Shown here one piece after another: positions 1,275 through 9,550 of a DNA stretch of 64,000 nucleotides. How positions within the stretch are numbered: position 1 is the stretch's first letter; each line of letters opens with the position of its first letter. A program made the position numbers and the translations under genes. The notes under the pieces are model-generated. The model saw only the letters and a list, made by a program, of their open reading frames with translations. It did not search any database and was not told the DNA's origin. The stretch comes from Selaginella moellendorffii (lineage: Eukaryota; Plantae; Lycopodiophyta), in assembly GCF_000143415.4 (NCBI RefSeq), contig NW_003314356.1, positions 620,001 through 684,000 on the forward strand. Direction: 5' to 3'.

Positions 1275-1454
1275 GAGAGCGGATGACTAATTTTCCAAGG
1301 CTTAGTTTATCTGCTCTAGTGAGGAAAGGGACCAAGTTTGTGTACATTCGTTCTCCCCAAAGAGAAAGGCAAAAAAAAAAAAAAAGAACTTGTAAGATGG
1401 TCCCTCCGCGTTTAAATTTGAATTTGGCGCTCTGGTTTTAGGGTTTATGGAAGA

Positions 1455-2392
1455 ATGGCGATATTTCTCATCTTTCTCATCGTCACTGGCTTGATCTCCC
1501 AATGCGGCGAGGATGGAGCGATTCACACAAGCGATGGGATCGATCTGGATCGCTATTGCGCCGCTGGCGATGCTTCTTGCAGGAATCCGGCGCCAAGGCG
1601 TGGTCTTCTCTTGGGTATTTCCAGATTTTTCAGTGTTTCGTCACGGATTTCGCCTCATCGTGATTCAGGCGCGTGCCGCTGCTGCCGCCATGGAGATTGG
1701 AGGGCGGATTATGGCACATCGGAGCGACAACAGCCGCAATGTTCCGGGATTTGGCAGCGAATGAGTCGTTTGAGGATCCAACGGAGCTTGCTTTACAGTT
1801 CTTGGCAAGATTGGACGAAGGAACGCTCTCCACGATCGGTCTGGGTACGCTATGCGCTTCAGTTCTTCGTCATATGCCAGTGTATTGGAGAAATGCCCGC
1901 GCTTGGACATCGAAGCCAGATGGTAAGGAACTCTTTCTTTTCTTTACTCCAGATTTTCATGAAAGAACCAGGGTCCGGGACTGTAACATTTGCGGAAGTT
2001 CCCCATATACCGAGCTTGCTCCATTACACTCTACGAGTTCTCCTAAGCCAGGTTTGAATTGATCATGAACTGTCACTACGATTCCAATTCTTTTGCTTTG
2101 CTTCCTATCATATCGTAGTGGCACGAGATCTCGGAGGAAAAGGGGAAGCATCTGGAGAAGTTCTTGATGGTTGCAGACTTCACATTCTCCTTCCTTCGAA
2201 TCCACCCGTTTCTCGACGGCAATGGACGATGCAGCCGATGGATGGCAGGTTCGTTTTCTTCCTTGCTTCTTCTAGAGATTGATTCCGACTCGCTTTGATC
2301 ATACAACAGGCTGGATGATGTATAGAGAGCTCGGGTTTGAGCTCAAACTTCCAGATGCCAACGAGACAACTCGCTACAAGGTTTTTCTCTAA
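1455..2392 (+). CDS. Spliced Fic/Fido-domain protein (Fic-A); N-terminal exon structure uncertain, possibly frameshifted
   Basis: Exon 2119-2248 reads WHEISEEKGKHLEKFLMVADFTFSFLRIHPFLDGNGRCSRWMA, with the canonical Fic motif at 2203-2238. Upstream exons give YWRNARAWTSKPD/EPGSGTVTFAEVPHIPSLL. Putative introns 1615-1668, 1923-1965, 2052-2118, 2249-2309; last exon GWMMYRELGFELKLP...YKVFL*. Confidence 0.7.
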
Positions 2393-2541
2393 GAAAGAAA
2401 CCATTGTAACGTTACAAGAATTTTGAATATCAGCCGTCCGATTTCTTATGATCCAACGGATGCCCCTAAATATATATTATCCTATTTAAACTAGGGAATA
2501 TAAAAAAGTTTGTATTAGGGTTTGTCAGCGAGGGTTGAGCG

Positions 2542-3633
2542 ATGCTCCTTCGATTCATCCTCGCGATCGCTCTTGTGATCGCAGTAGACGCACGGGCGTC
2601 GGGAAAGGCGGACTACGAGGTCTCGGCGAATCCATTCTGGCGATCCAGCGACGCAGTGAGCACTAGCGAGCTCGTCTCTAGGATCCACGAATTCCGAGAT
2701 CGATACAGGCAGCTCCCGGAGGAGCACAAGCGGTGGGCGAGAGAGAGCTATGGCCCCGAGGCTCTGTTGCAGTACCTCTTCCAGGTAAACAAGATCGAGG
2801 GAGAGGGATTTGACACCTTTGAGGAGACGAGGGAAGCCATTCTTCGGGGCAAAGCTCTTGAGCTGGGAGATGTGATTCAATCCGATAGGAGGCTGGAAGC
2901 CGTGCGCTGCCTCGACCGAGCCTTGAGGATTTTCCTCCCGGATCACCAAGAGAATGGCACAGTGGTCGAGCTCCTCAGTGTTCCAAAGATCTTGGAAGCT
3001 CACCAGGAGCTCATGGCGAGCACAAAGCCCGAGTTTGCAGCACACTTGAGGCGAGAGATGCACGAAGTGGTGTTTACCAGGACGCTAGCGGGTGGAATTC
3101 ACGTCTTTTTGTGGCCGACGCGAGTGGAAGCAGCGCTGGAAGAGCTGGTGGCGAGCTCCAACGAAGAACTCAAGGAGCTCATCGCCATCGACGAGGCGGA
3201 GTTCTCGGCCGAGAGCTTGGAGGCGATCCTCAAGTTTGGTGCCAGGGTCTTCTTCGAGTTTGAGAACGTCCATCCTTTCCTGGACGGGAATGGCCGGGTT
3301 GGGAGGATCGTTCTGGCAGCACTCCTTCGCAGCGTGATGCCGTTTCCCAATGTTCTCCTCGTGGAGAGAAGCGATGGCAATGCGGATGAACCTCCTTTCG
3401 TGGACAAGAGGGACTACTATGAATGTTTCGCTAGAGCTCAGGAGGAGCAAAAGTTTGAGATGGTTCGCAGCGATGGCGCTGGTGCCTCTCGGATTGTGGT
3501 GGCGGAGGAGAATGTTGCCAATGCCAGGATTTATCCTCCAGCGGATCTAGCTGCGCTGGTTATCGAGGGAGTCTACGTTGGATGGAAGAGATTTTTCGAT
3601 GCTCTTGGCTCTCAAAGTTTTGCCACCTTCTAG
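2542..3633 (+). CDS. Intronless Fic/Fido-domain protein with N-terminal signal peptide (Fic-B), 363 aa
   Basis: Hydrophobic leader MLLRFILAIALVIAVDARA; intact HPFLDGNGRVGR at 3271-3306; VNKIEGEG resembles the Fic regulatory helix motif (S/T)xxxE(G/N). Confidence 0.92.
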   Translation: MLLRFILAIALVIAVDARASGKADYEVSANPFWRSSDAVSTSELVSRIHEFRDRYRQLPEEHKRWARESYGPEALLQYLFQVNKIEGEGFDTFEETREAILRGKALELGDVIQSDRRLEAVRCLDRALRIFLPDHQENGTVVELLSVPKILEAHQELMASTKPEFAAHLRREMHEVVFTRTLAGGIHVFLWPTRVEAALEELVASSNEELKELIAIDEAEFSAESLEAILKFGARVFFEFENVHPFLDGNGRVGRIVLAALLRSVMPFPNVLLVERSDGNADEPPFVDKRDYYECFARAQEEQKFEMVRSDGAGASRIVVAEENVANARIYPPADLAALVIEGVYVGWKRFFDALGSQSFATF

Positions 3634-3700
3634 CCTTGTAAAAACATGAAATTTTTAACTGTCGTTGAAATGATCAAAGCTCTACAAAGAAGGAAAAGAC

Positions 3701-5818
3701 TTAACTTTTTTGCAAAGTTTCCATAAGCATCCTTGCTGCCGAGTCTTTGGCCTTGTTGATCGTAGGCCTTGGCTGACCGATGCATTCTTGTTTCTCTCCT
3801 TGCTCGATACGAACCGATGCTGTGCATGTAAACATCTTTGCGTGGGCCGGCCCGGTTTCACTGTGTGTGCTGCAAAACGAAGATCGATAAAAAGATGGAG
3901 AAAACTAGAAACTTACTTGTAGTCTGGACATGGCCAGCCTCTCTGAGAGCACAGCTCATGTAGCGCCTGTCTTGAGAATTCTCCACTCGTTTTTTCTTCT
4001 TGAGACGGTGTTAGAGGGGACGCGCTTTTGTCGAGCTTCGCTATTGCATTGATGGCCGCCAGCTTCTTCGCCATCTTCTTTTGGACGTTTGTACCACGGC
4101 CGAGAACTTTGTTTCCGACGAGAGCCCTGGCTAGGAACAGATCCCCGGACAAGGAGTAATCCCATTCCAGTTTTTTCATGTGCTTGTCACAGAGCTCGTA
4201 GAGCTCGCGGACTGGATGGATTGGAACTGCTTCTGGTGTCACCAGCGGCTGTAGCAATGGCTCAAAAACCTGCGATTTCATGTTTAAGAGAAAGAAAGGA
4301 AAAAAGAAAAACAACAGACCTTCCAGACTTGATCCAAGTTTAAGCCACTGTCAATGTAGAGTGCCCCAACGAGTGATTGGAAAACATCTCCTAACACCTT
4401 CGGTGCCTTGACAGCTCCAAAACCATACGAATAGATGGCATTCTCTTCCATATTAAGCGCATGTTTCGCATAAGTTTTTATCTGCGCTGCAAAGGAAACT
4501 ACTCGTCAAGAAAAGAGATCAACAACTTACTTGAGAGTGGAAGTCATTCGATTCGTGCAAGATATGAGCATGGAGCTTGTGCTTGACCATTGCTCGAGCA
4601 AAACTCTCGCTGTTAAGAGCTGCACAGCGCAAGTCTGTCAAGCGCCCGGGATGTAAGTCCTTGTAGGAGAAGTATATGTGCCTTGTCAAGAGATGGTCCA
4701 GCACAGCATCACCTATAAACTCGAGACGCTCGTAAATAGGAACCATGGAAGCTTGCCGAGAAGAAGAGTGCGTGAGAGCCTGAGCGAGCAGATTTCTCGA
4801 TCCAAAACTATACCCGAGTGTGTTTTCCAGCCCCTCAAAGTCGATCGAATTGAGAACCTCTGGAGAAACAACACTTCCAGCCCTGGCGATCTGGAGCTCG
4901 GCATCGCTAAAGCCTGTCTCGATACCAAGCCACTCCACTACGTGCCGAGCACCTTTGTCGCCATGGTGGACGTAGTAAGCTCCGATCAGTGCTTCCACCA
5001 CGTTTGCCAGGACTTTACTTGAGAGCTCTTGGAGATCCGTGGGCTCTCTTCCAGGCACGAAAGGATTTATCCTCACGTAAGTCTCAAGTCCTTTCTCCAA
5101 GGCAAGGTAGTGAAGCGCCGAGTTTGAGATGATCTTTCCACGCGTGATCGTGAGCTCTCCTTCCGGAAAATCTGAGAACTTTAGATAGAGTCTGGTGCTC
5201 ACGGCCCACTTGAGATACGCATCGCCGAGAAGTTCTATGCGCTCGTAGCAGTATGGCTCGTGACAATTAGCAGCGGTGAGAGCTTCCAAGATCTGCAAAC
5301 AGAAGAATTCTATGAGACTGTAGAGAAAACAAGGAAAGAAATCAGACCTTTGAAGCGGGGATGTTGTAGTTTATTGCTTTTCTCAGCTGGATAGCCTGCA
5401 TCATACGCTCCACCCGGTTCCTCAAATGTGGGAGCTTCTCAGTCCCTTTAGATACAAGCTCGGAAAAATTATGGATAAAACCAGCATCAAATTCTTCTTG
5501 CTCATCTAGCGAGAAATTCCAAAAATCACGACATAAAAATCTAGCTCGCAGCTAAACCTGAGAAGAATATCAAGTTCTCACCACGAATTCTCTTCCAAGG
5601 CTGCTGCTGCTGCTGGCCCGACTTGTAGCAGCAGAAGAAAACCACAAAACTCACAACCAAATTCCACTTACTAGTCTCGAATGGCGCCGACGACGAGCAT
5701 GCTCTGGCGCCGCGCCACCGGGAGCGCAGCGCTCGAATTCTCGGAGAAAATCTGTGCTGGAGCTCCAAAGCCTTGAAACAAGGCAGTGGATTCGCGAGGA
5801 GCATACCGCCCTCGTCAT
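3701..5818 (-). CDS. DCL1-derived protein: two RNase III domains plus two dsRBDs, no helicase, DUF283 or PAZ
   Basis: LPHLRNRVERMMQAIQLRKAINYNIPASKILEALTAANCHEPYCYERIELLGDAYLKW closely parallels the DCL1 RNase IIIa entry; second domain ERLEFIGDAVL...KAPKVLGDVFQSLVGA; dsRBDs HPVRELYELC and SRQALHELC...GPAHAKMFTC...KAKDSAA; stop at 3701-3703. A consistent 7-exon model starts at ATG 5818. Confidence 0.85.
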
Positions 5819-5877
5819 AAACCCTAGCGAATATCCCCCAAACGAAGATATTTTGAATTTGGGCGCCAAGAACACCC

Positions 5878-8800
5878 TCACCGGGCGTGGGGTTGGGCGA
5901 AGACCGAGCTTAGATCCATGGTCGACCGTGGATTTCTGGGCGCATCCAGGTGGTAGGGAGTTCCCGCTGCTGCTGCCCGCGATGATTCTACGTCATCGTC
6001 GAATTGGTCGGGATTGTGTGGTTTTGGCGATGATTCGAGGCCGACCGGCTCTTCTTCGAGATCCAGAGCCTCCTGGAGCTCGCGCGCCACCTCCGCCATC
6101 GTTGGTCGATTCACCCCATGCGGCTCCACGCAATACATTGCGATCTCGCCGACCTTCCACAGAGATTCCATCCGGGGAGCGTCGCCAAGCGCTGGATCCA
6201 CGATGCTCTTTATGTCCCCCTTTTGGAGAGCCGCTCGAGCCTGGAAGAAGAAGAAGAGGAATCCATGAGCTCGATCGAAGAAGAACTACGCGAGAGATCG
6301 CACTGACCCACTGGACGATGTTGGATTCCGGCTCGAAGAGCTCGGGACTGAGAGGCTCTCTCGCGGAGATGGTCTCGAGGAGAACGATTCCAAAGCTATA
6401 GACATCGCTCTTCTCGGTGAGGCGTTGGTTCATGTAGTATCTGCGAAGAGAGGATCGAGCTTTAGAGACAGAAGTAGAAGAAGAGAGAAGAGCTCTTACT
6501 CGGGATCCAAGTATCCCACTGTTCCTTTGACAGTGGTGGAGACGAGGCTCGACCCTTCCGAGGTCATTTTGGAGAGGCCAAAGTCGGCAACTTTGCCAGT
6601 TTTCTTGTCACTGATGAGAATGTTGCTGCTCTTGACATCTCGGTGGATGATACTCGGATTGCATCCAGTGTGGAGATAATCCAGGCCTGGATAGAAGAAG
6701 AAGAAGATAAAAAAAGTTCTTTTTGGACAACTTCCAGACCTTTTGCTGCGTCCAAAAGAACTTTGAGCCTCGCAGTCCAGTCCAGGACGAGTCGATCTTC
6801 TTCTTTGGCTGGCAAAGAACAATAAAATCTTAGCACTTGTGCTTTGCTCGATCTCCAGAATCACATACCGTAGAGGCAATCTCTCAGCGTTCCTATGTGC
6901 ATGAACTCGTACACGAGGATTCGTTCTTTTCCTTCTTGGCAAAATCCCAAGAACGAAACCAAGTTACGGTGGTGAATGCGAGACAAGAGCGTTACCTGAA
7001 AGAGCTCAAGTTCATTGAAAGATCCAAGAGGAAGAAGAAAGAACTTACTTCGTTGGAGAATTCTCTGGCTCCTTGGTGCGACGTCGCTGATAACACTTTG
7101 ATCGCAACTTCTCTGCCGTTCTTGAGCCTTCCATAGTAGACAGTTCCAAAACCACCGGAGCCAATCTTGTTGCCAAAGTTGTTTGATGCTTCTTTCATCT
7201 CTTGGAACGAGTAGCGATACGCATCGCTTGGTTGCTCCTGGACGAAGCTCCCACTGTCGGATCCGTGAGACTGGTGTGTAGAGATCATGGACGTGAAAGA
7301 GTCCGCTGCTAGAGAGTTTTTGCCTTCGTTAGAGACGAAATGGAAGAAACCAGAGAACGAAACTTTCAGGACTTACGCTGGTCCGCAGTAGTTTTTGATG
7401 GAGTGCTTGCCTTATATGATCTCCGCTTCTTTCTCAAGAACACGAAGTATATTGCTGTTGCTGCTCCCGCGCAAAGAATTATCCCTCCTATCAATCCACC
7501 AACAATTCCTCCGATAACTCTCGATCGTGAGTAATTGTTCGAGCAATCCCTGGTACACAGGTTTGGATTTCCAGAGTACTGGAAATCCAAGCCACGCCTG
7601 TTTAGAAGGTCCTCGGGTATACTTCCAGTTAAAAGGTTGTTCTGGAGGTATCTAGCAACAGGAGAAATGAATGGAGTCTGTAAAATAATTGGATTGACAA
7701 GAGCTACTTACAGTAGTTGGAGTGTTTGTATATTTTCGAGAGATTCCGGAAAGTCTCCGCTAAGACGATTGCTTTCGAGATGCCTGGAACTTAGACGCTC
7801 AAAAACCTCCCTAGGAGAATTCACTAAACTTACAGTTGTCTCAAGACAGAGAGTCGACTCATATCGGGTATAGAACCTGACAAGGAATTGTTTCGGAGAT
7901 CTCTGCGGGAAGAAAAGAAATGTAAGACGTGAGATGAGAAACAAAACTGGACGAAGATCTTACAATATGTTTAAGCCTGTCATTTGAGAAACACCAGCAG
8001 GGATTGTACCATTCAAGTTACTGTTTGGAAGTATTCTGTTCAGCACAAAAACAAGCTTCGAACTTGAACAAAACAATGGTAAACATTTTCAAAGCTTACA
8101 TTCCATTAACTCTCGGAATTCCATCGTTGCTGCAAGTTATCCAGTCCCACATCACGGGAAGACATGGATCTCCCGTCCCAGAGAGTCCAAACTGCTGAAT
8201 GAATTGGCCGAGAGAATTCACTGCAAAAAAAGGATCATATGAAATGAAAGCGTAGAAAATGAAGAACTTGAGTACCATCGTCCAAGTTTGTGGGAGATTG
8301 CCTGTTTACAATCCTCAGCACCTCCATGGCGTTGAGTATAGGACCCAAGTTTGCCTCCGCCGTTCTCTGGAAAGCAAAGTTTATGATTCCAGGCAAAGAG
8401 ATGTTGTCATATCCAGGTTCGTAGGCTTGAAACGCACCGATGTCATTCCGGAGGTTCACAACTTGGTTTCGAAAGAACGTATCGCTGGGCAGGATGAAGG
8501 TGAAAGCTCGAACGTCGCTGGCTCTCAACTCTTGGATCTCCGCAAAGTAAGTTCTTCCGAAAGCAAACGCCGGGAACTCTGGGATGAAGTAGCGATACGT
8601 CAAGCTTCCATTGGATCCCACCACTGCGGTTTGCATGACACGCTCGGGAGGCCTCTCGGCAGCCGTATCCACTCCTACCGTCGAAGTTGTGTTCACTCGG
8701 ATCGTCCCGGGAGCTTCCGCGGCGAGATTGTTTGGCCTGGTAAGATCCGACTGCCATCTTCGATCGACTATATCATCCGGATACCTGAAAGTTTTGCTGC

Positions 8801-9550
8801 AAAGTTGTAGAAAGGAAAAACTCTGGTGATTTTTCTTACCTCACGTCGTCGGTTGTGAGAGCTCCAAAGTTGATGCGAACGATATGTTGGAGGTGAGCTC
8901 GACCTTCGTATGGAGCCGAGTACATGGATCCAATCAGTTGTCTAAGCTCGAGAGTAGAGATAAATGGAACTCCAGTTCCTCCACTCACAAGACAAGCTTC
9001 CAGCGTCGATCCGGGGGAGAGAAACAGCATCTCCACGAAAACTTCACGATTGATATCTTCCACCCTCACTTCGGCCCAGCGCGTAACGTTGAGATATATG
9101 GTAAACTCGGGAGCAGTGTTTCGGCCATCGTAGTTTCCATAGAGAAAAGTTGCTCGGATGAGATACCGCTGGCTGGCATTCACAGGAAGCGAGTAGCAGC
9201 TCTTGCGATCGGGTCCAGGAAAAGATCGAAGCTGCCTGTATGGATTCCGGACGGAAGAGTTTGATACCTGACGGATGACGCTGTTACTTGCTCCACTCGA
9301 GAGGAAGAAAGCGTCTGGCTGCCACCGAATTCCGGTGGCTGGATCCGTGTAGCTTGCATTCGCTCCACAATCCAAGCTCAAAAATCCTGCCAAAAGGATA
9401 CAAAAGTTCCTTGCTTTAGAAGGGAAGAACTTCAAGGTAGGGGAAGAGATTTTCTTCTCACTCACCTGGTTGAGCTGAAACTTCGAGGCTAGTTTGATGG
9501 ATCACGAGCGCGACGAGCGAGAAAAAGAGGAGGAGAGAGATTCGATCCAT
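5878..9550 (-). CDS. Malectin-like domain LRR receptor-like kinase (LRR-I type), multi-exon
   Basis: Signal peptide [16 protein letters not shown]; GFLSLDCG and [13 protein letters not shown] (malectin-like); GDPC motif; short LRR exons; TM helix; kinase motifs [34 protein letters not shown]. Confidence 0.92.

What the first reader, a model, noticed from the sequence alone, without database searches (positions are those of the whole stretch)
2542..3633. Secretory-pathway Fic (AMPylase-type) enzyme in a land plant
Seen: an intronless 363-aa ORF with a cleavable-looking signal peptide, a perfect HPFxDGNGRxxR motif, an N-glycosylation sequon (NGT), an upstream VNKIEGEG helix and no HDEL/KDEL. 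Known: Fic enzymes AMPylate proteins. Animal FICD/HYPE acts on ER BiP and uses the Glu of a TxxIEGN helix to switch between AMPylation and deAMPylation. To my knowledge flowering plants lack a FICD ortholog. Inference: either a plant ER-lumen BiP regulator or a secreted antimicrobial toxin, possibly acquired horizontally. It lacks the TPRs of FICD.
Basis: partly seen in the sequence, partly recalled or inferred. Interest (0 to 1): 0.85.

Follow-up and report, generated by a model that had tools for sequence, protein, structure and literature searches.

The report
Signal-peptide Fic enzyme gene in Selaginella
This is a real, transcribed spikemoss gene for a Fic-type protein-modifying enzyme (AMP-transferase type). 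It belongs to a lycophyte and fern family that reviews say plants lack, because public gene models cut out the catalytic motif, and it is the only copy examined here that carries a secretion signal.

Summary
Window 2542..3633 (+) is an intact 363-aa ORF in Selaginella moellendorffii. It has a Pfam Fic domain and a canonical motif, H244-PFLDGNGRVG-R255. It also has an FICD-like gatekeeper helix (VNKIE86G), one NGT sequon, no H/KDEL, and a signal-peptide-like N-terminus.

- **Annotation error:** the public models of this gene (SELMODRAFT_407185 and 447619) delete the active site. Model 407185 does so by splicing out an in-frame 99-nt "intron" (3234..3332). Transcript contigs from four studies run through this segment unspliced. 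Two paralogue loci carry the same kind of error.
- **Family:** the gene belongs to a lycophyte and fern Fic clade under purifying selection (dN/dS about 0.2). Its sister is a large intronless family whose one named member is from a sponge. The nearest solved structures are the catalytic domains of metazoan FICD and FIC-1. No prokaryote genome holds a close relative.
- **Not an FICD orthologue by architecture:** there is no TPR domain and no membrane anchor.
- **Signal peptide:** it is unique to this paralogue and its allele.
- **Unknown:** activity, localisation and target are all untested.

The scan found this family before on other DNA of this genome (s1-432092), and probably this gene's allele (s1-394659).

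Verdict: a new variant of a known kind, of moderate interest.

The parts
2499..2506 (+). TATAAAAA box-like element about 25-30 nt upstream of where two transcript contigs begin (2531)
   Evidence: Sequence read; contig starts at 2531 in runs X3 and X4. That it acts as a promoter element is inferred, not tested.
2536..2538 (+). In-frame TGA stop immediately upstream of the start codon
   Evidence: It fixes M1 (2542) as the first possible start, so the hydrophobic N-terminus is part of any full-length product.
2542..3633 (+). Intronless CDS of the 363-aa Fic protein (stop included)
   Evidence: Transcript contigs are continuous across it. dN/dS is 0.17-0.22 against paralogues.
2542..2598 (+). 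Predicted cleavable signal peptide, residues 1-19 (n-region MLLR, 11-residue h-region, A-R-A before S20)
   Evidence: Hydrophobicity 3.43 over residues 5-15. pLDDT is low (64 and 49 for the first two ten-residue blocks) against 85-98 for the next eight blocks (residues 21-100). Absent from all relatives aligned. Heuristic only; no SignalP was run.
2632..2643 (+). Family-specific N-terminal P31-F-W-R34 motif
   Evidence: P, W and R are conserved in most plant members and most members of the sister clade.
2785..2808 (+). Gatekeeper (inhibitory) helix motif V82-N-K-I-E86-G-E-G
   Evidence: Aligned to the IEGN helix of C. elegans FIC-1 and to the corresponding helix of human FICD by the family profile. 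E86 is kept in 7 of 9 plant and 51 of 57 sister-clade sequences.
2953..2961 (+). Single N-X-T sequon (N138-G-T) in a lineage-specific, lower-confidence loop
   Evidence: Within chance expectation, so not evidence on its own.
3234..3332 (+). 99-nt in-frame GT..AG segment that public model SELMODRAFT_407185 removes as an intron. It encodes K231-S264, including the whole Fic motif
   Evidence: Alignment of P0001 with the ORF and the sequence. No joint here in contigs of four RNA studies.
3271..3306 (+). Fic catalytic motif H244-PFLDGNGRVG-R255
   Evidence: H, P, G and N are invariant; F, D, G, R and R are nearly invariant in 66 family members.
3565..3588 (+). Family-specific C-terminal helix motif E342-G-V-Y-V-G-W-K349
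   Evidence: Invariant in plant members and largely kept in the sister clade.
2462..3869 (.). Span covered without gaps by transcript contigs, merged with the convergent DCL-like gene's transcript
   Evidence: table 8. The same contigs skip the neighbour's minus-strand GT..AG introns, so they are RNA. Contigs do not give the strand.

Best explanation
A real, transcribed, intronless nuclear gene of Selaginella moellendorffii. It encodes a stand-alone FICD-type Fic catalytic domain with an N-terminal gatekeeper helix (class II arrangement).

**Shown:**
- The ORF, fold and catalytic motif are intact.
- It belongs to a lycophyte and fern Fic family under purifying selection.
- The motif-encoding segment is present in transcript contigs.
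- Public gene models wrongly delete that segment.

**Inferred:**
- The enzyme transfers AMP (or another NMP) from a nucleotide triphosphate onto Ser, Thr or Tyr hydroxyls of target proteins, using H244 as the catalytic base.
- E86 holds it in an auto-inhibited state by blocking productive binding of the ATP gamma-phosphate at R255. As in FICD, E86 may also support the reverse, de-AMPylating reaction.
- The first about 19 residues are a cleavable signal peptide gained only by this paralogue, so the catalytic domain enters the ER lumen. With no H/KDEL or membrane anchor it then travels on or is secreted.

The target is unknown.
For: - **ORF and upstream stop:**
- **Domain:** Pfam Fic at 48.9 bits.
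- **Motif:** canonical and conserved across 66 relatives.
- **Structure:** AF2 model with pLDDT 87 and pTM 0.87. The best structural matches are human FICD (Z 24.8, rmsd 3.4 over 251 residues, model 37-363 on FICD 186-441), BT_2513 (Z 23.9) and C. elegans FIC-1 (Z 23.7).
- **Sequence profile:** the family profile hits FIC-1 and FICD at E 3e-26 and 1.5e-25, ahead of any bacterial structure. The gatekeeper helix aligns with the IEGN helix.
- **Transcription:** contigs from four studies cover the ORF at 99% identity or more without splicing, while the same contigs splice the neighbour's introns. All four start within 80 nt upstream of the ATG, and there is no coverage further upstream.
- **Selection:** dN/dS is 0.17-0.22 against paralogues.
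- **Signal peptide:** the hydrophobic N-terminus is unique among relatives, identical in both haplotype models, and poorly modelled compared with the rest of the protein.
Against: - No enzymatic, localisation or glycosylation data exist.
- The signal-peptide call is a hand heuristic, not a trained predictor.
- Contigs give no strand. Coverage over the ORF could in principle be a long antisense 3' extension of the convergent DCL-like gene.
- The Ser/Thr of the (S/T)xxxE(G/N) inhibitory motif is Val here and in all plant members.
- All close paralogues look cytosolic, so the ancestral targets are probably cytosolic.
Confidence: 0.6

Rival explanations
1. It is a functional analogue of FICD: an ER-lumenal enzyme that reversibly AMPylates the Hsp70 chaperone BiP to match chaperone capacity to protein load.
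For: The catalytic domain is closest, by profile and by structure, to FICD and FIC-1. The gatekeeper Glu is conserved. The N-terminal signal would place it in the BiP compartment.
Against: FICD needs its TPR domain to recognise BiP for both reactions (PMC8373988), and this protein has no TPR domain. It has no ER-retention signal or anchor. Its closest paralogues lack any signal, so the family did not evolve around a lumenal substrate.
Confidence: 0.15
2. It is a secreted defence protein, an apoplastic or vacuolar Fic toxin acting on microbes or herbivores.
For: A signal peptide without H/KDEL implies default secretion in plants (established knowledge). Many bacterial Fic proteins are toxins. 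The gene family is expanded in Selaginella and sits near receptor-kinase genes.
Against: A retained gatekeeper Glu implies an auto-inhibited enzyme, unlike typical effector Fic toxins. There is no cell-entry or translocation domain: Pfam finds only Fic. ATP is scarce outside cells. There is no sign of fast diversifying evolution (dN/dS about 0.2).
Confidence: 0.1
3. The hydrophobic N-terminus does not work as a signal. The protein is cytosolic, or tethered as a signal anchor, like its paralogues, and modifies cytosolic targets.
For: All relatives examined lack a signal. Only a heuristic supports the signal here.
Against: The start codon is fixed by an upstream in-frame stop. The next Met is M156, so any full-length product carries the segment. 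An 11-residue hydrophobic core followed by A-x-A is the classic signal-peptide layout and is too short for a membrane span. It is identical in both alleles.
Confidence: 0.12
4. It is a recent bacterial transfer, a contaminant, or a silent pseudogene.
For: Fic proteins are mainly bacterial, and the gene is intronless. A 2015 survey inferred several bacterium-to-eukaryote transfers for Fic (PMC4454073).
Against: It is flanked on the same DNA by plant genes with spliced introns, including RNase III/dsRBD, a G-lectin receptor kinase and a PPR gene. Both haplotypes and many paralogues exist. The best prokaryotic match is 27-31% identical and partial. The plant clade is monophyletic (SH-aLRT 98) and is sister to a eukaryote-like clade, not nested in prokaryotes. 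It is transcribed and under purifying selection.
Confidence: 0.03

Closest known systems
Metazoan FICD/HYPE and C. elegans FIC-1 (ER AMPylase/deAMPylase of BiP)
   Same: - Same Fic fold: Z 24.8 for human FICD and 23.7 for FIC-1, covering residues 37-363.
- Identical catalytic motif type, HPFxDGNGRxxR.
- An N-terminal gatekeeper helix with IEG and the conserved Glu.
- Best PDB sequence-profile matches (E 3e-26 and 1.5e-25).
- Predicted topology with the catalytic domain in the secretory-pathway lumen.
   Different: - No TPR domain and no linker; about 40 residues precede the Fic fold.
- A short cleavable-type signal instead of a type II membrane anchor.
- Only about 20% identity.
- Val replaces Thr at the first position of the TxxxEG motif.
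- Family-specific PxWR and EGxYxGW motifs.
- Orthology was not tested by a tree that includes FICD.
Bacterial class II Fic proteins with solved structures (BT_2513 of Bacteroides thetaiotaomicron, Dde_2494, SoFic, C. difficile Fic)
   Same: A single-chain Fic domain with an intramolecular N-terminal inhibitory helix. Structural scores are tied with FICD (BT_2513 Z 23.9, Dde_2494 Z 23.3).
   Different: Weaker profile matches (E 1e-20 to 1e-8). No Fic_N or HTH domains. No prokaryotic genome holds a relative above 31% identity. Prokaryotes group on the other side of a branch with 93% SH-aLRT support.
Selaginella and fern paralogues (SELMODRAFT_414686 and 444864, Adiantum nelumboides L7F22_068990, RefSeq 'fic-1' XP_024542721)
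   Same: Same clade (SH-aLRT 98), 41-60% identity. The catalytic motif is intact once the genomic ORFs are read. They share the N- and C-terminal family motifs.
   Different: None has the N-terminal signal peptide. XP_024542721 and XP_024515747 have Asn instead of the gatekeeper Glu.
Intronless multi-copy Fic family on large eukaryote-like contigs (named member: Dysidea avara XP_065908787, 'FICD-like')
   Same: Sister clade of the plant family. It shares the PxWR start, the gatekeeper SNxGE helix, the canonical motif and the C-terminal Trp helix.
   Different: 25-30% identity. Often about 380 aa, with an extra C-terminal tail. Occurs in tandem arrays. No signal peptide. Taxonomy is known for only one member.

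Membership tests
Fic/Fido domain (Pfam PF02661), NMP-transfer-competent type | Significant match to the Fic HMM above the curated cut-off | tested here: met
   48.9 bits against a cut-off of 24, E 1.2e-12.
Fic/Fido domain (Pfam PF02661), NMP-transfer-competent type | Canonical motif HxFx(D/E)GNGRxxR with all residues present | tested here: met
   H244-PFLDGNGRVG-R255, conserved across the family.
Fic/Fido domain (Pfam PF02661), NMP-transfer-competent type | Fic fold | tested here: met
   AF2 pLDDT 87. Foldseek E 2e-9 and VIA Z 23-25 to solved Fic domains.
Fic/Fido domain (Pfam PF02661), NMP-transfer-competent type | Nucleotidyl (AMP) transfer activity | not testable with these tools
   Needs an in vitro assay.
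Class II (intramolecular N-terminal alpha-inh) Fic proteins | Inhibitory motif (S/T)xxxE(G/N) on a helix N-terminal to the Fic core | tested here: inconclusive
   E86-G87 lie on helix 60-85/86 and align to the FIC-1 and FICD helix. The first position is Val82, not Ser/Thr, in all plant members. The Glu-Arg geometry could not be read because no coordinates were available.
FICD/HYPE orthologues | TPR domain N-terminal to the Fic domain | tested here: not met
   No TPR family in Pfam at E up to 1. None in 66 family members. Only about 40 residues precede the fold.
FICD/HYPE orthologues | N-terminal type II transmembrane anchor | tested here: not met
   The hydrophobic run is only 11 residues and is followed by D-A-R-A; the best 19-residue window has mean KD 2.0. 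This is a signal-peptide layout rather than an anchor (heuristic).
FICD/HYPE orthologues | Groups with FICD in a phylogeny to the exclusion of other Fic clades | not tested
   No FICD sequence could be obtained by reference. Only indirect evidence exists: FICD and FIC-1 are the best PDB profile hits.
FICD/HYPE orthologues | AMPylates and de-AMPylates BiP | not testable with these tools
   Needs biochemistry.
Lycophyte-fern Fic clade (unnamed) | Monophyly with Selaginella and fern sequences | tested here: met
   Nine plant rows form one clade with SH-aLRT 98. The window protein pairs with SELMODRAFT_414686 (97).
Lycophyte-fern Fic clade (unnamed) | Shared PxWR N-terminal and EGxYxGWK C-terminal motifs | tested here: met
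   P31, W33, R34 and E342-K349.

The most novel reading that the evidence does not exclude
A cytosolic Fic paralogue was retargeted to the secretory pathway by gaining a signal peptide. This gave an early vascular plant lineage its own lumenal reversible AMPylation system, acting on BiP or another lumenal or apoplastic protein. It would have arisen independently of the animal FICD architecture (no TPR, no anchor), in a kingdom where reviews say Fic enzymes are absent.
Probability: 0.15. Interest if true: 0.8.

Novelty: new variant of a known kind. Interest (0 to 1): 0.55.

Why it matters
Reviews of AMPylation state that Fic enzymes are absent from plants (PMC12409994) and that FICD is not conserved there (PMC11088923). 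This gene shows that lycophytes and ferns carry a conserved, expressed family with an FICD-like catalytic domain.

The family stayed largely invisible because the deposited models of this gene and of two paralogues delete the catalytic motif. The intact proteins are absent from a 15-billion-sequence collection.

The signal-peptide paralogue is the natural entry point for asking whether any plant uses AMPylation in the secretory pathway. It is also a practical warning: short in-frame GT..AG segments can be wrongly spliced out by gene predictors in genomes with very short introns.

Tried and rejected
- **Homodimer prediction** (complex prediction, residues 21-363, two copies). The result was 'no answer' (0.27 against a mark of 0.32). 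It is evidence neither for nor against an FICD-like dimer switch.
- **Naming the sister clade's organisms.** Two NCBI assemblies (GCA_008849205.1, GCA_029782515.1) could not be tied to an organism through a literature search. Only one member is named, from Dysidea avara. Atlas look-alikes point to eukaryotic clusters (Mollusca, Ascomycota), as leads only.
- **Looking for bona fide FICD sequences** among long hits, to root the tree. Ten proteins of 433-560 aa showed only Fic and no TPR, so FICD is not in the tree.
- **Literature search** for Fic with Selaginella, Viridiplantae or sponge found nothing relevant.
- **E86-R255 contact.** The model's coordinates are not exposed, so it was not checked.
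- **N-glycosylation sequon as evidence.** Rejected, because one sequon is within chance.
- **Bacterial contamination or recent transfer.** Rejected.
- **The 99-nt segment as a real intron.** Rejected for the major transcript. A rare spliced isoform cannot be excluded, because contigs drop rare variants.

Full report
**1. What is in the sequence**

Window 2542..3633 (+) is a 363-codon ORF starting with ATG. The codon triplet at 2536-2538 is an in-frame TGA, so the ORF cannot begin further upstream. The next Met is residue 156, so any full-length product starts at M1.

- Pfam assigns a Fic domain (PF02661, 48.9 bits, cut-off 24, E 1.2e-12).
- The catalytic motif H244-PFLDGNGRVG-R255 (nt 3271-3306) is canonical at every position.
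- The stretch V82-N-K-I-E86-G-E-G (nt 2785-2808) is aligned by HMMER onto the IEGN gatekeeper helix of C. elegans FIC-1.
- There is one N-X-T sequon (N138), two cysteines, and no H/KDEL at the C-terminus.
- Residues 1-19 read M-L-L-R, then an 11-residue hydrophobic core (mean Kyte-Doolittle 3.43), then A-R-A before S20. This is the classical n/h/c layout of a cleavable signal peptide.

The single sequon is within chance expectation, and a cytosolic-type paralogue has one too. I therefore do not count it as evidence.

**2. Organism and context**

The nearest database proteins are SELMODRAFT_407185 and SELMODRAFT_447619 of Selaginella moellendorffii. They are 99% and 100% identical over the aligned columns.

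The neighbours are ordinary plant nuclear genes:
- a convergent RNase III/dsRBD (Dicer-like) gene on the minus strand;
- a malectin-like ORF;
- a G-type lectin S-receptor kinase;
- a PPR gene.

This, the two haplotype alleles and the many paralogues rule out contamination.

**3. The public gene models delete the active site**

SELMODRAFT_407185 (330 aa) equals the ORF, except that residues K231-S264 are replaced by a single Asn. This corresponds exactly to removing nt 3234..3332, a 99-nt in-frame segment that happens to begin with GT and end with AG. The segment encodes the entire Fic motif. SELMODRAFT_447619 has a larger deletion at the same place.

The same error affects paralogues. The genomic loci of SELMODRAFT_444864 (L003) and SELMODRAFT_414686 (L004) contain uninterrupted ORFs of 356 and 334 aa with intact HPFxDGNGRxGR motifs, which the deposited proteins lack.

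The three intact proteins are not present in the 15-billion-sequence collection. The deposited versions carry no precomputed Pfam domain.

**4. Transcription**

Contigs of four runs from four different studies were laid on window 1300-6000.

- They are RNA. They skip CT..AC (minus-strand GT..AG) introns of the neighbouring Dicer-like gene at 3870-3916, 5293-5347 and 5506-5581.
- The same contigs cover the Fic ORF continuously from 2462, 2531, 2531 and 2540 to 3869. They have two to four mismatches and no joint at 3234/3332.
- The differences at 2768 and 2935/2937 reproduce the L76S and L131F differences of the other haplotype's model, so both alleles appear in transcriptomes.
- No contig covers 1300-2460.

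The coverage starts within 80 nt upstream of the ATG in every run, and a TATAAAAA element lies at 2499-2506. This fits a plus-strand promoter.

One caveat applies. The contigs are merged with the convergent neighbour's transcript and carry no strand information, so sense transcription is very likely but not proven. A rare isoform that splices out the 99-nt segment cannot be excluded from contigs.

**5. Selection**

Against its two closest paralogues the gene shows dN/dS of 0.17 and 0.22, with saturated dS. That indicates long-term purifying selection on the protein.

**6. Fold**

An AlphaFold2 model built with 66 homologues has mean pLDDT 87 and pTM 0.87.

- The first two ten-residue blocks, which hold the putative signal helix, have mean pLDDT of only 64 and 49. 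The next eight blocks (residues 21-100) score 85-98.
- Foldseek and VIA-align give Fic domains only:
  - human FICD: Z 24.8, rmsd 3.4 A, 251 residues, model 37-363 on FICD 186-441;
  - BT_2513: Z 23.9;
  - C. elegans FIC-1: Z 23.7;
  - Dde_2494: Z 23.3.
- Other bacterial Fic proteins score Z 20-21 or lower.
- A profile of the family hits FIC-1 (E 2.9e-26) and FICD (E 1.5e-25) ahead of any bacterial structure (BT_2513 at 1.2e-20). The alignment includes the gatekeeper helix.

The mature protein therefore corresponds to the FICD catalytic domain alone. No TPR domain is detected in it or in any of 66 relatives.

**7. Family and origin**

- An exhaustive HMMER search found 264 representatives at E of 0.001 or less, and 43 at 1e-10 or less.
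- Named close relatives are all from Selaginella (at least nine gene models or loci) or the fern Adiantum nelumboides. One Selaginella paralogue is already labelled 'adenosine monophosphate-protein transferase fic-1' by RefSeq.
- In a maximum-likelihood tree of 91 sequences, the nine plant rows form one clade (SH-aLRT 98). Both Selaginella and fern members occur in more than one subclade.
- The sister of the plant clade is a clade of 57 unnamed sequences (97). The two together (93) are separated from the 25 best prokaryotic relatives.
- The sister clade consists of intronless, often tandem genes on contigs of up to megabases. The one named member is from the sponge Dysidea avara (XP_065908787, on a 40.5-Mb record).
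- Both clades share a PxWR motif near the N-terminus, the gatekeeper Glu (7 of 9 plant sequences, 51 of 57 others) and a C-terminal EGxYxGW helix.
- Scanning one genome for each of 185,579 prokaryotic species found nothing better than 27-31% identity over part of the protein.

There is thus no support for a recent bacterial origin. An old origin, at or before the lycophyte-fern split with loss in seed plants, is the simplest reading. The root and the full taxon range are not established.

**8. The signal peptide is a lineage-specific addition**

None of the aligned relatives has an N-terminal hydrophobic core. This holds for the genomic ORFs of the two closest paralogues, which begin a few residues before the PFWR motif. 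The segment is identical in both haplotype models. No trained predictor was available, so its function is inferred.

**9. Mechanism proposed**

By homology to characterised Fic enzymes (Engel et al. 2012 for the inhibitory Glu; PMC8373988 for FICD):
- H244 would deprotonate a target hydroxyl for attack on the alpha-phosphate of ATP.
- E86 would obstruct productive ATP binding. As in FICD, it could also support hydrolytic de-AMPylation.
- The signal peptide would place the enzyme in the ER lumen. With no retention signal or anchor, it would move on or be secreted.

The target is unknown. BiP is possible, but FICD recognises BiP through its TPR domain (PMC8373988), which is absent here. A secreted-toxin role fits the lack of retention but not the retained auto-inhibition or the lack of an entry domain.

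**10. Comparison with the literature and earlier scan notes**

- A 2025 review states that eukaryotic Fic proteins are absent in plants and fungi (PMC12409994).
- A 2024 review states that FICD does not appear conserved in plants (PMC11088923).
- A 2015 survey mentions unspecified 'plant' Fic proteins in a mixed eukaryotic clade (PMC4454073 supplement).
- I found no paper on Fic proteins of Selaginella or ferns.
- Within this scan, 25 notes concern Fic genes of this genome.
- A follow-up on another piece (s1-432092) also concluded that an overlooked lycophyte-fern Fic family was hidden by faulty models. My results reach the same point independently.
- Note s1-394659 (1092 letters, same title type) is probably the allele of this gene.

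**11. Verdict**

It is a new variant of a known enzyme kind, of moderate interest.

Noticed in passing
window 2119-2298 (+), possibly with 1664-2059 (+): A second Fic catalytic-motif piece (RIHPFLDGNGRCSR) lies 250-420 nt upstream of the gene. It scores 34 bits on Pfam Fic (cut-off 24). An upstream ORF in another frame carries a PPWR-like start. No transcript contig from four runs covers it. It is either a divergent split gene or a relic.
   Followed up: partly
window 14688-15371 (-): A divergent Fic-like ORF (227 aa) whose motif reads RPFVDGSARVGE. The catalytic His and other motif residues are replaced, and there is no Pfam hit. It looks like a catalytically dead paralogue or a pseudogene.
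   Followed up: partly
window 3701-5818 (-): The convergent Dicer-like (RNase III + dsRBD) gene has tiny introns confirmed by transcript contigs at 3870-3916 (47 nt), 5293-5347 (55 nt) and 5506-5581 (76 nt). There is also a 50-nt gap at 4268-4317. Its 3' end overlaps or abuts the Fic gene's 3' end, so assemblers merge the two transcripts.
   Followed up: partly
L003:3001-4071 and L004:2878-3882 (S. moellendorffii GL377613.1, GL377589.1): The paralogue models SELMODRAFT_444864 and SELMODRAFT_414686 also lack the Fic motif, although the genomic ORFs are uninterrupted and encode it. This looks like a systematic mis-annotation of in-frame GT..AG segments.
   Followed up: yes
P0016 / P0158 (XP_024542721, XP_024515747, S. 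moellendorffii): These paralogues have Asn in place of the gatekeeper Glu (V-N-T-I-N-G), with an intact catalytic motif. They could be constitutively active Fic enzymes.
   Followed up: no
L001:138-6927; L085:950-2807: Sister-clade Fic genes occur in tandem or head-to-head arrays: three in 7 kb on a 620-kb contig beside an SH2-domain fragment, and two on a 3-kb contig. This suggests a large lineage-specific expansion in a marine eukaryote; a sponge is the only named source.
   Followed up: partly
window 8836-9465 (-), 9830-11977 (-), 15945-18092 (+): A malectin-like ORF, an intronless G-type lectin S-receptor kinase (B_lectin + S_locus_glycop + Pkinase) and a 715-aa PPR protein flank the Fic cluster.
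   Followed up: no
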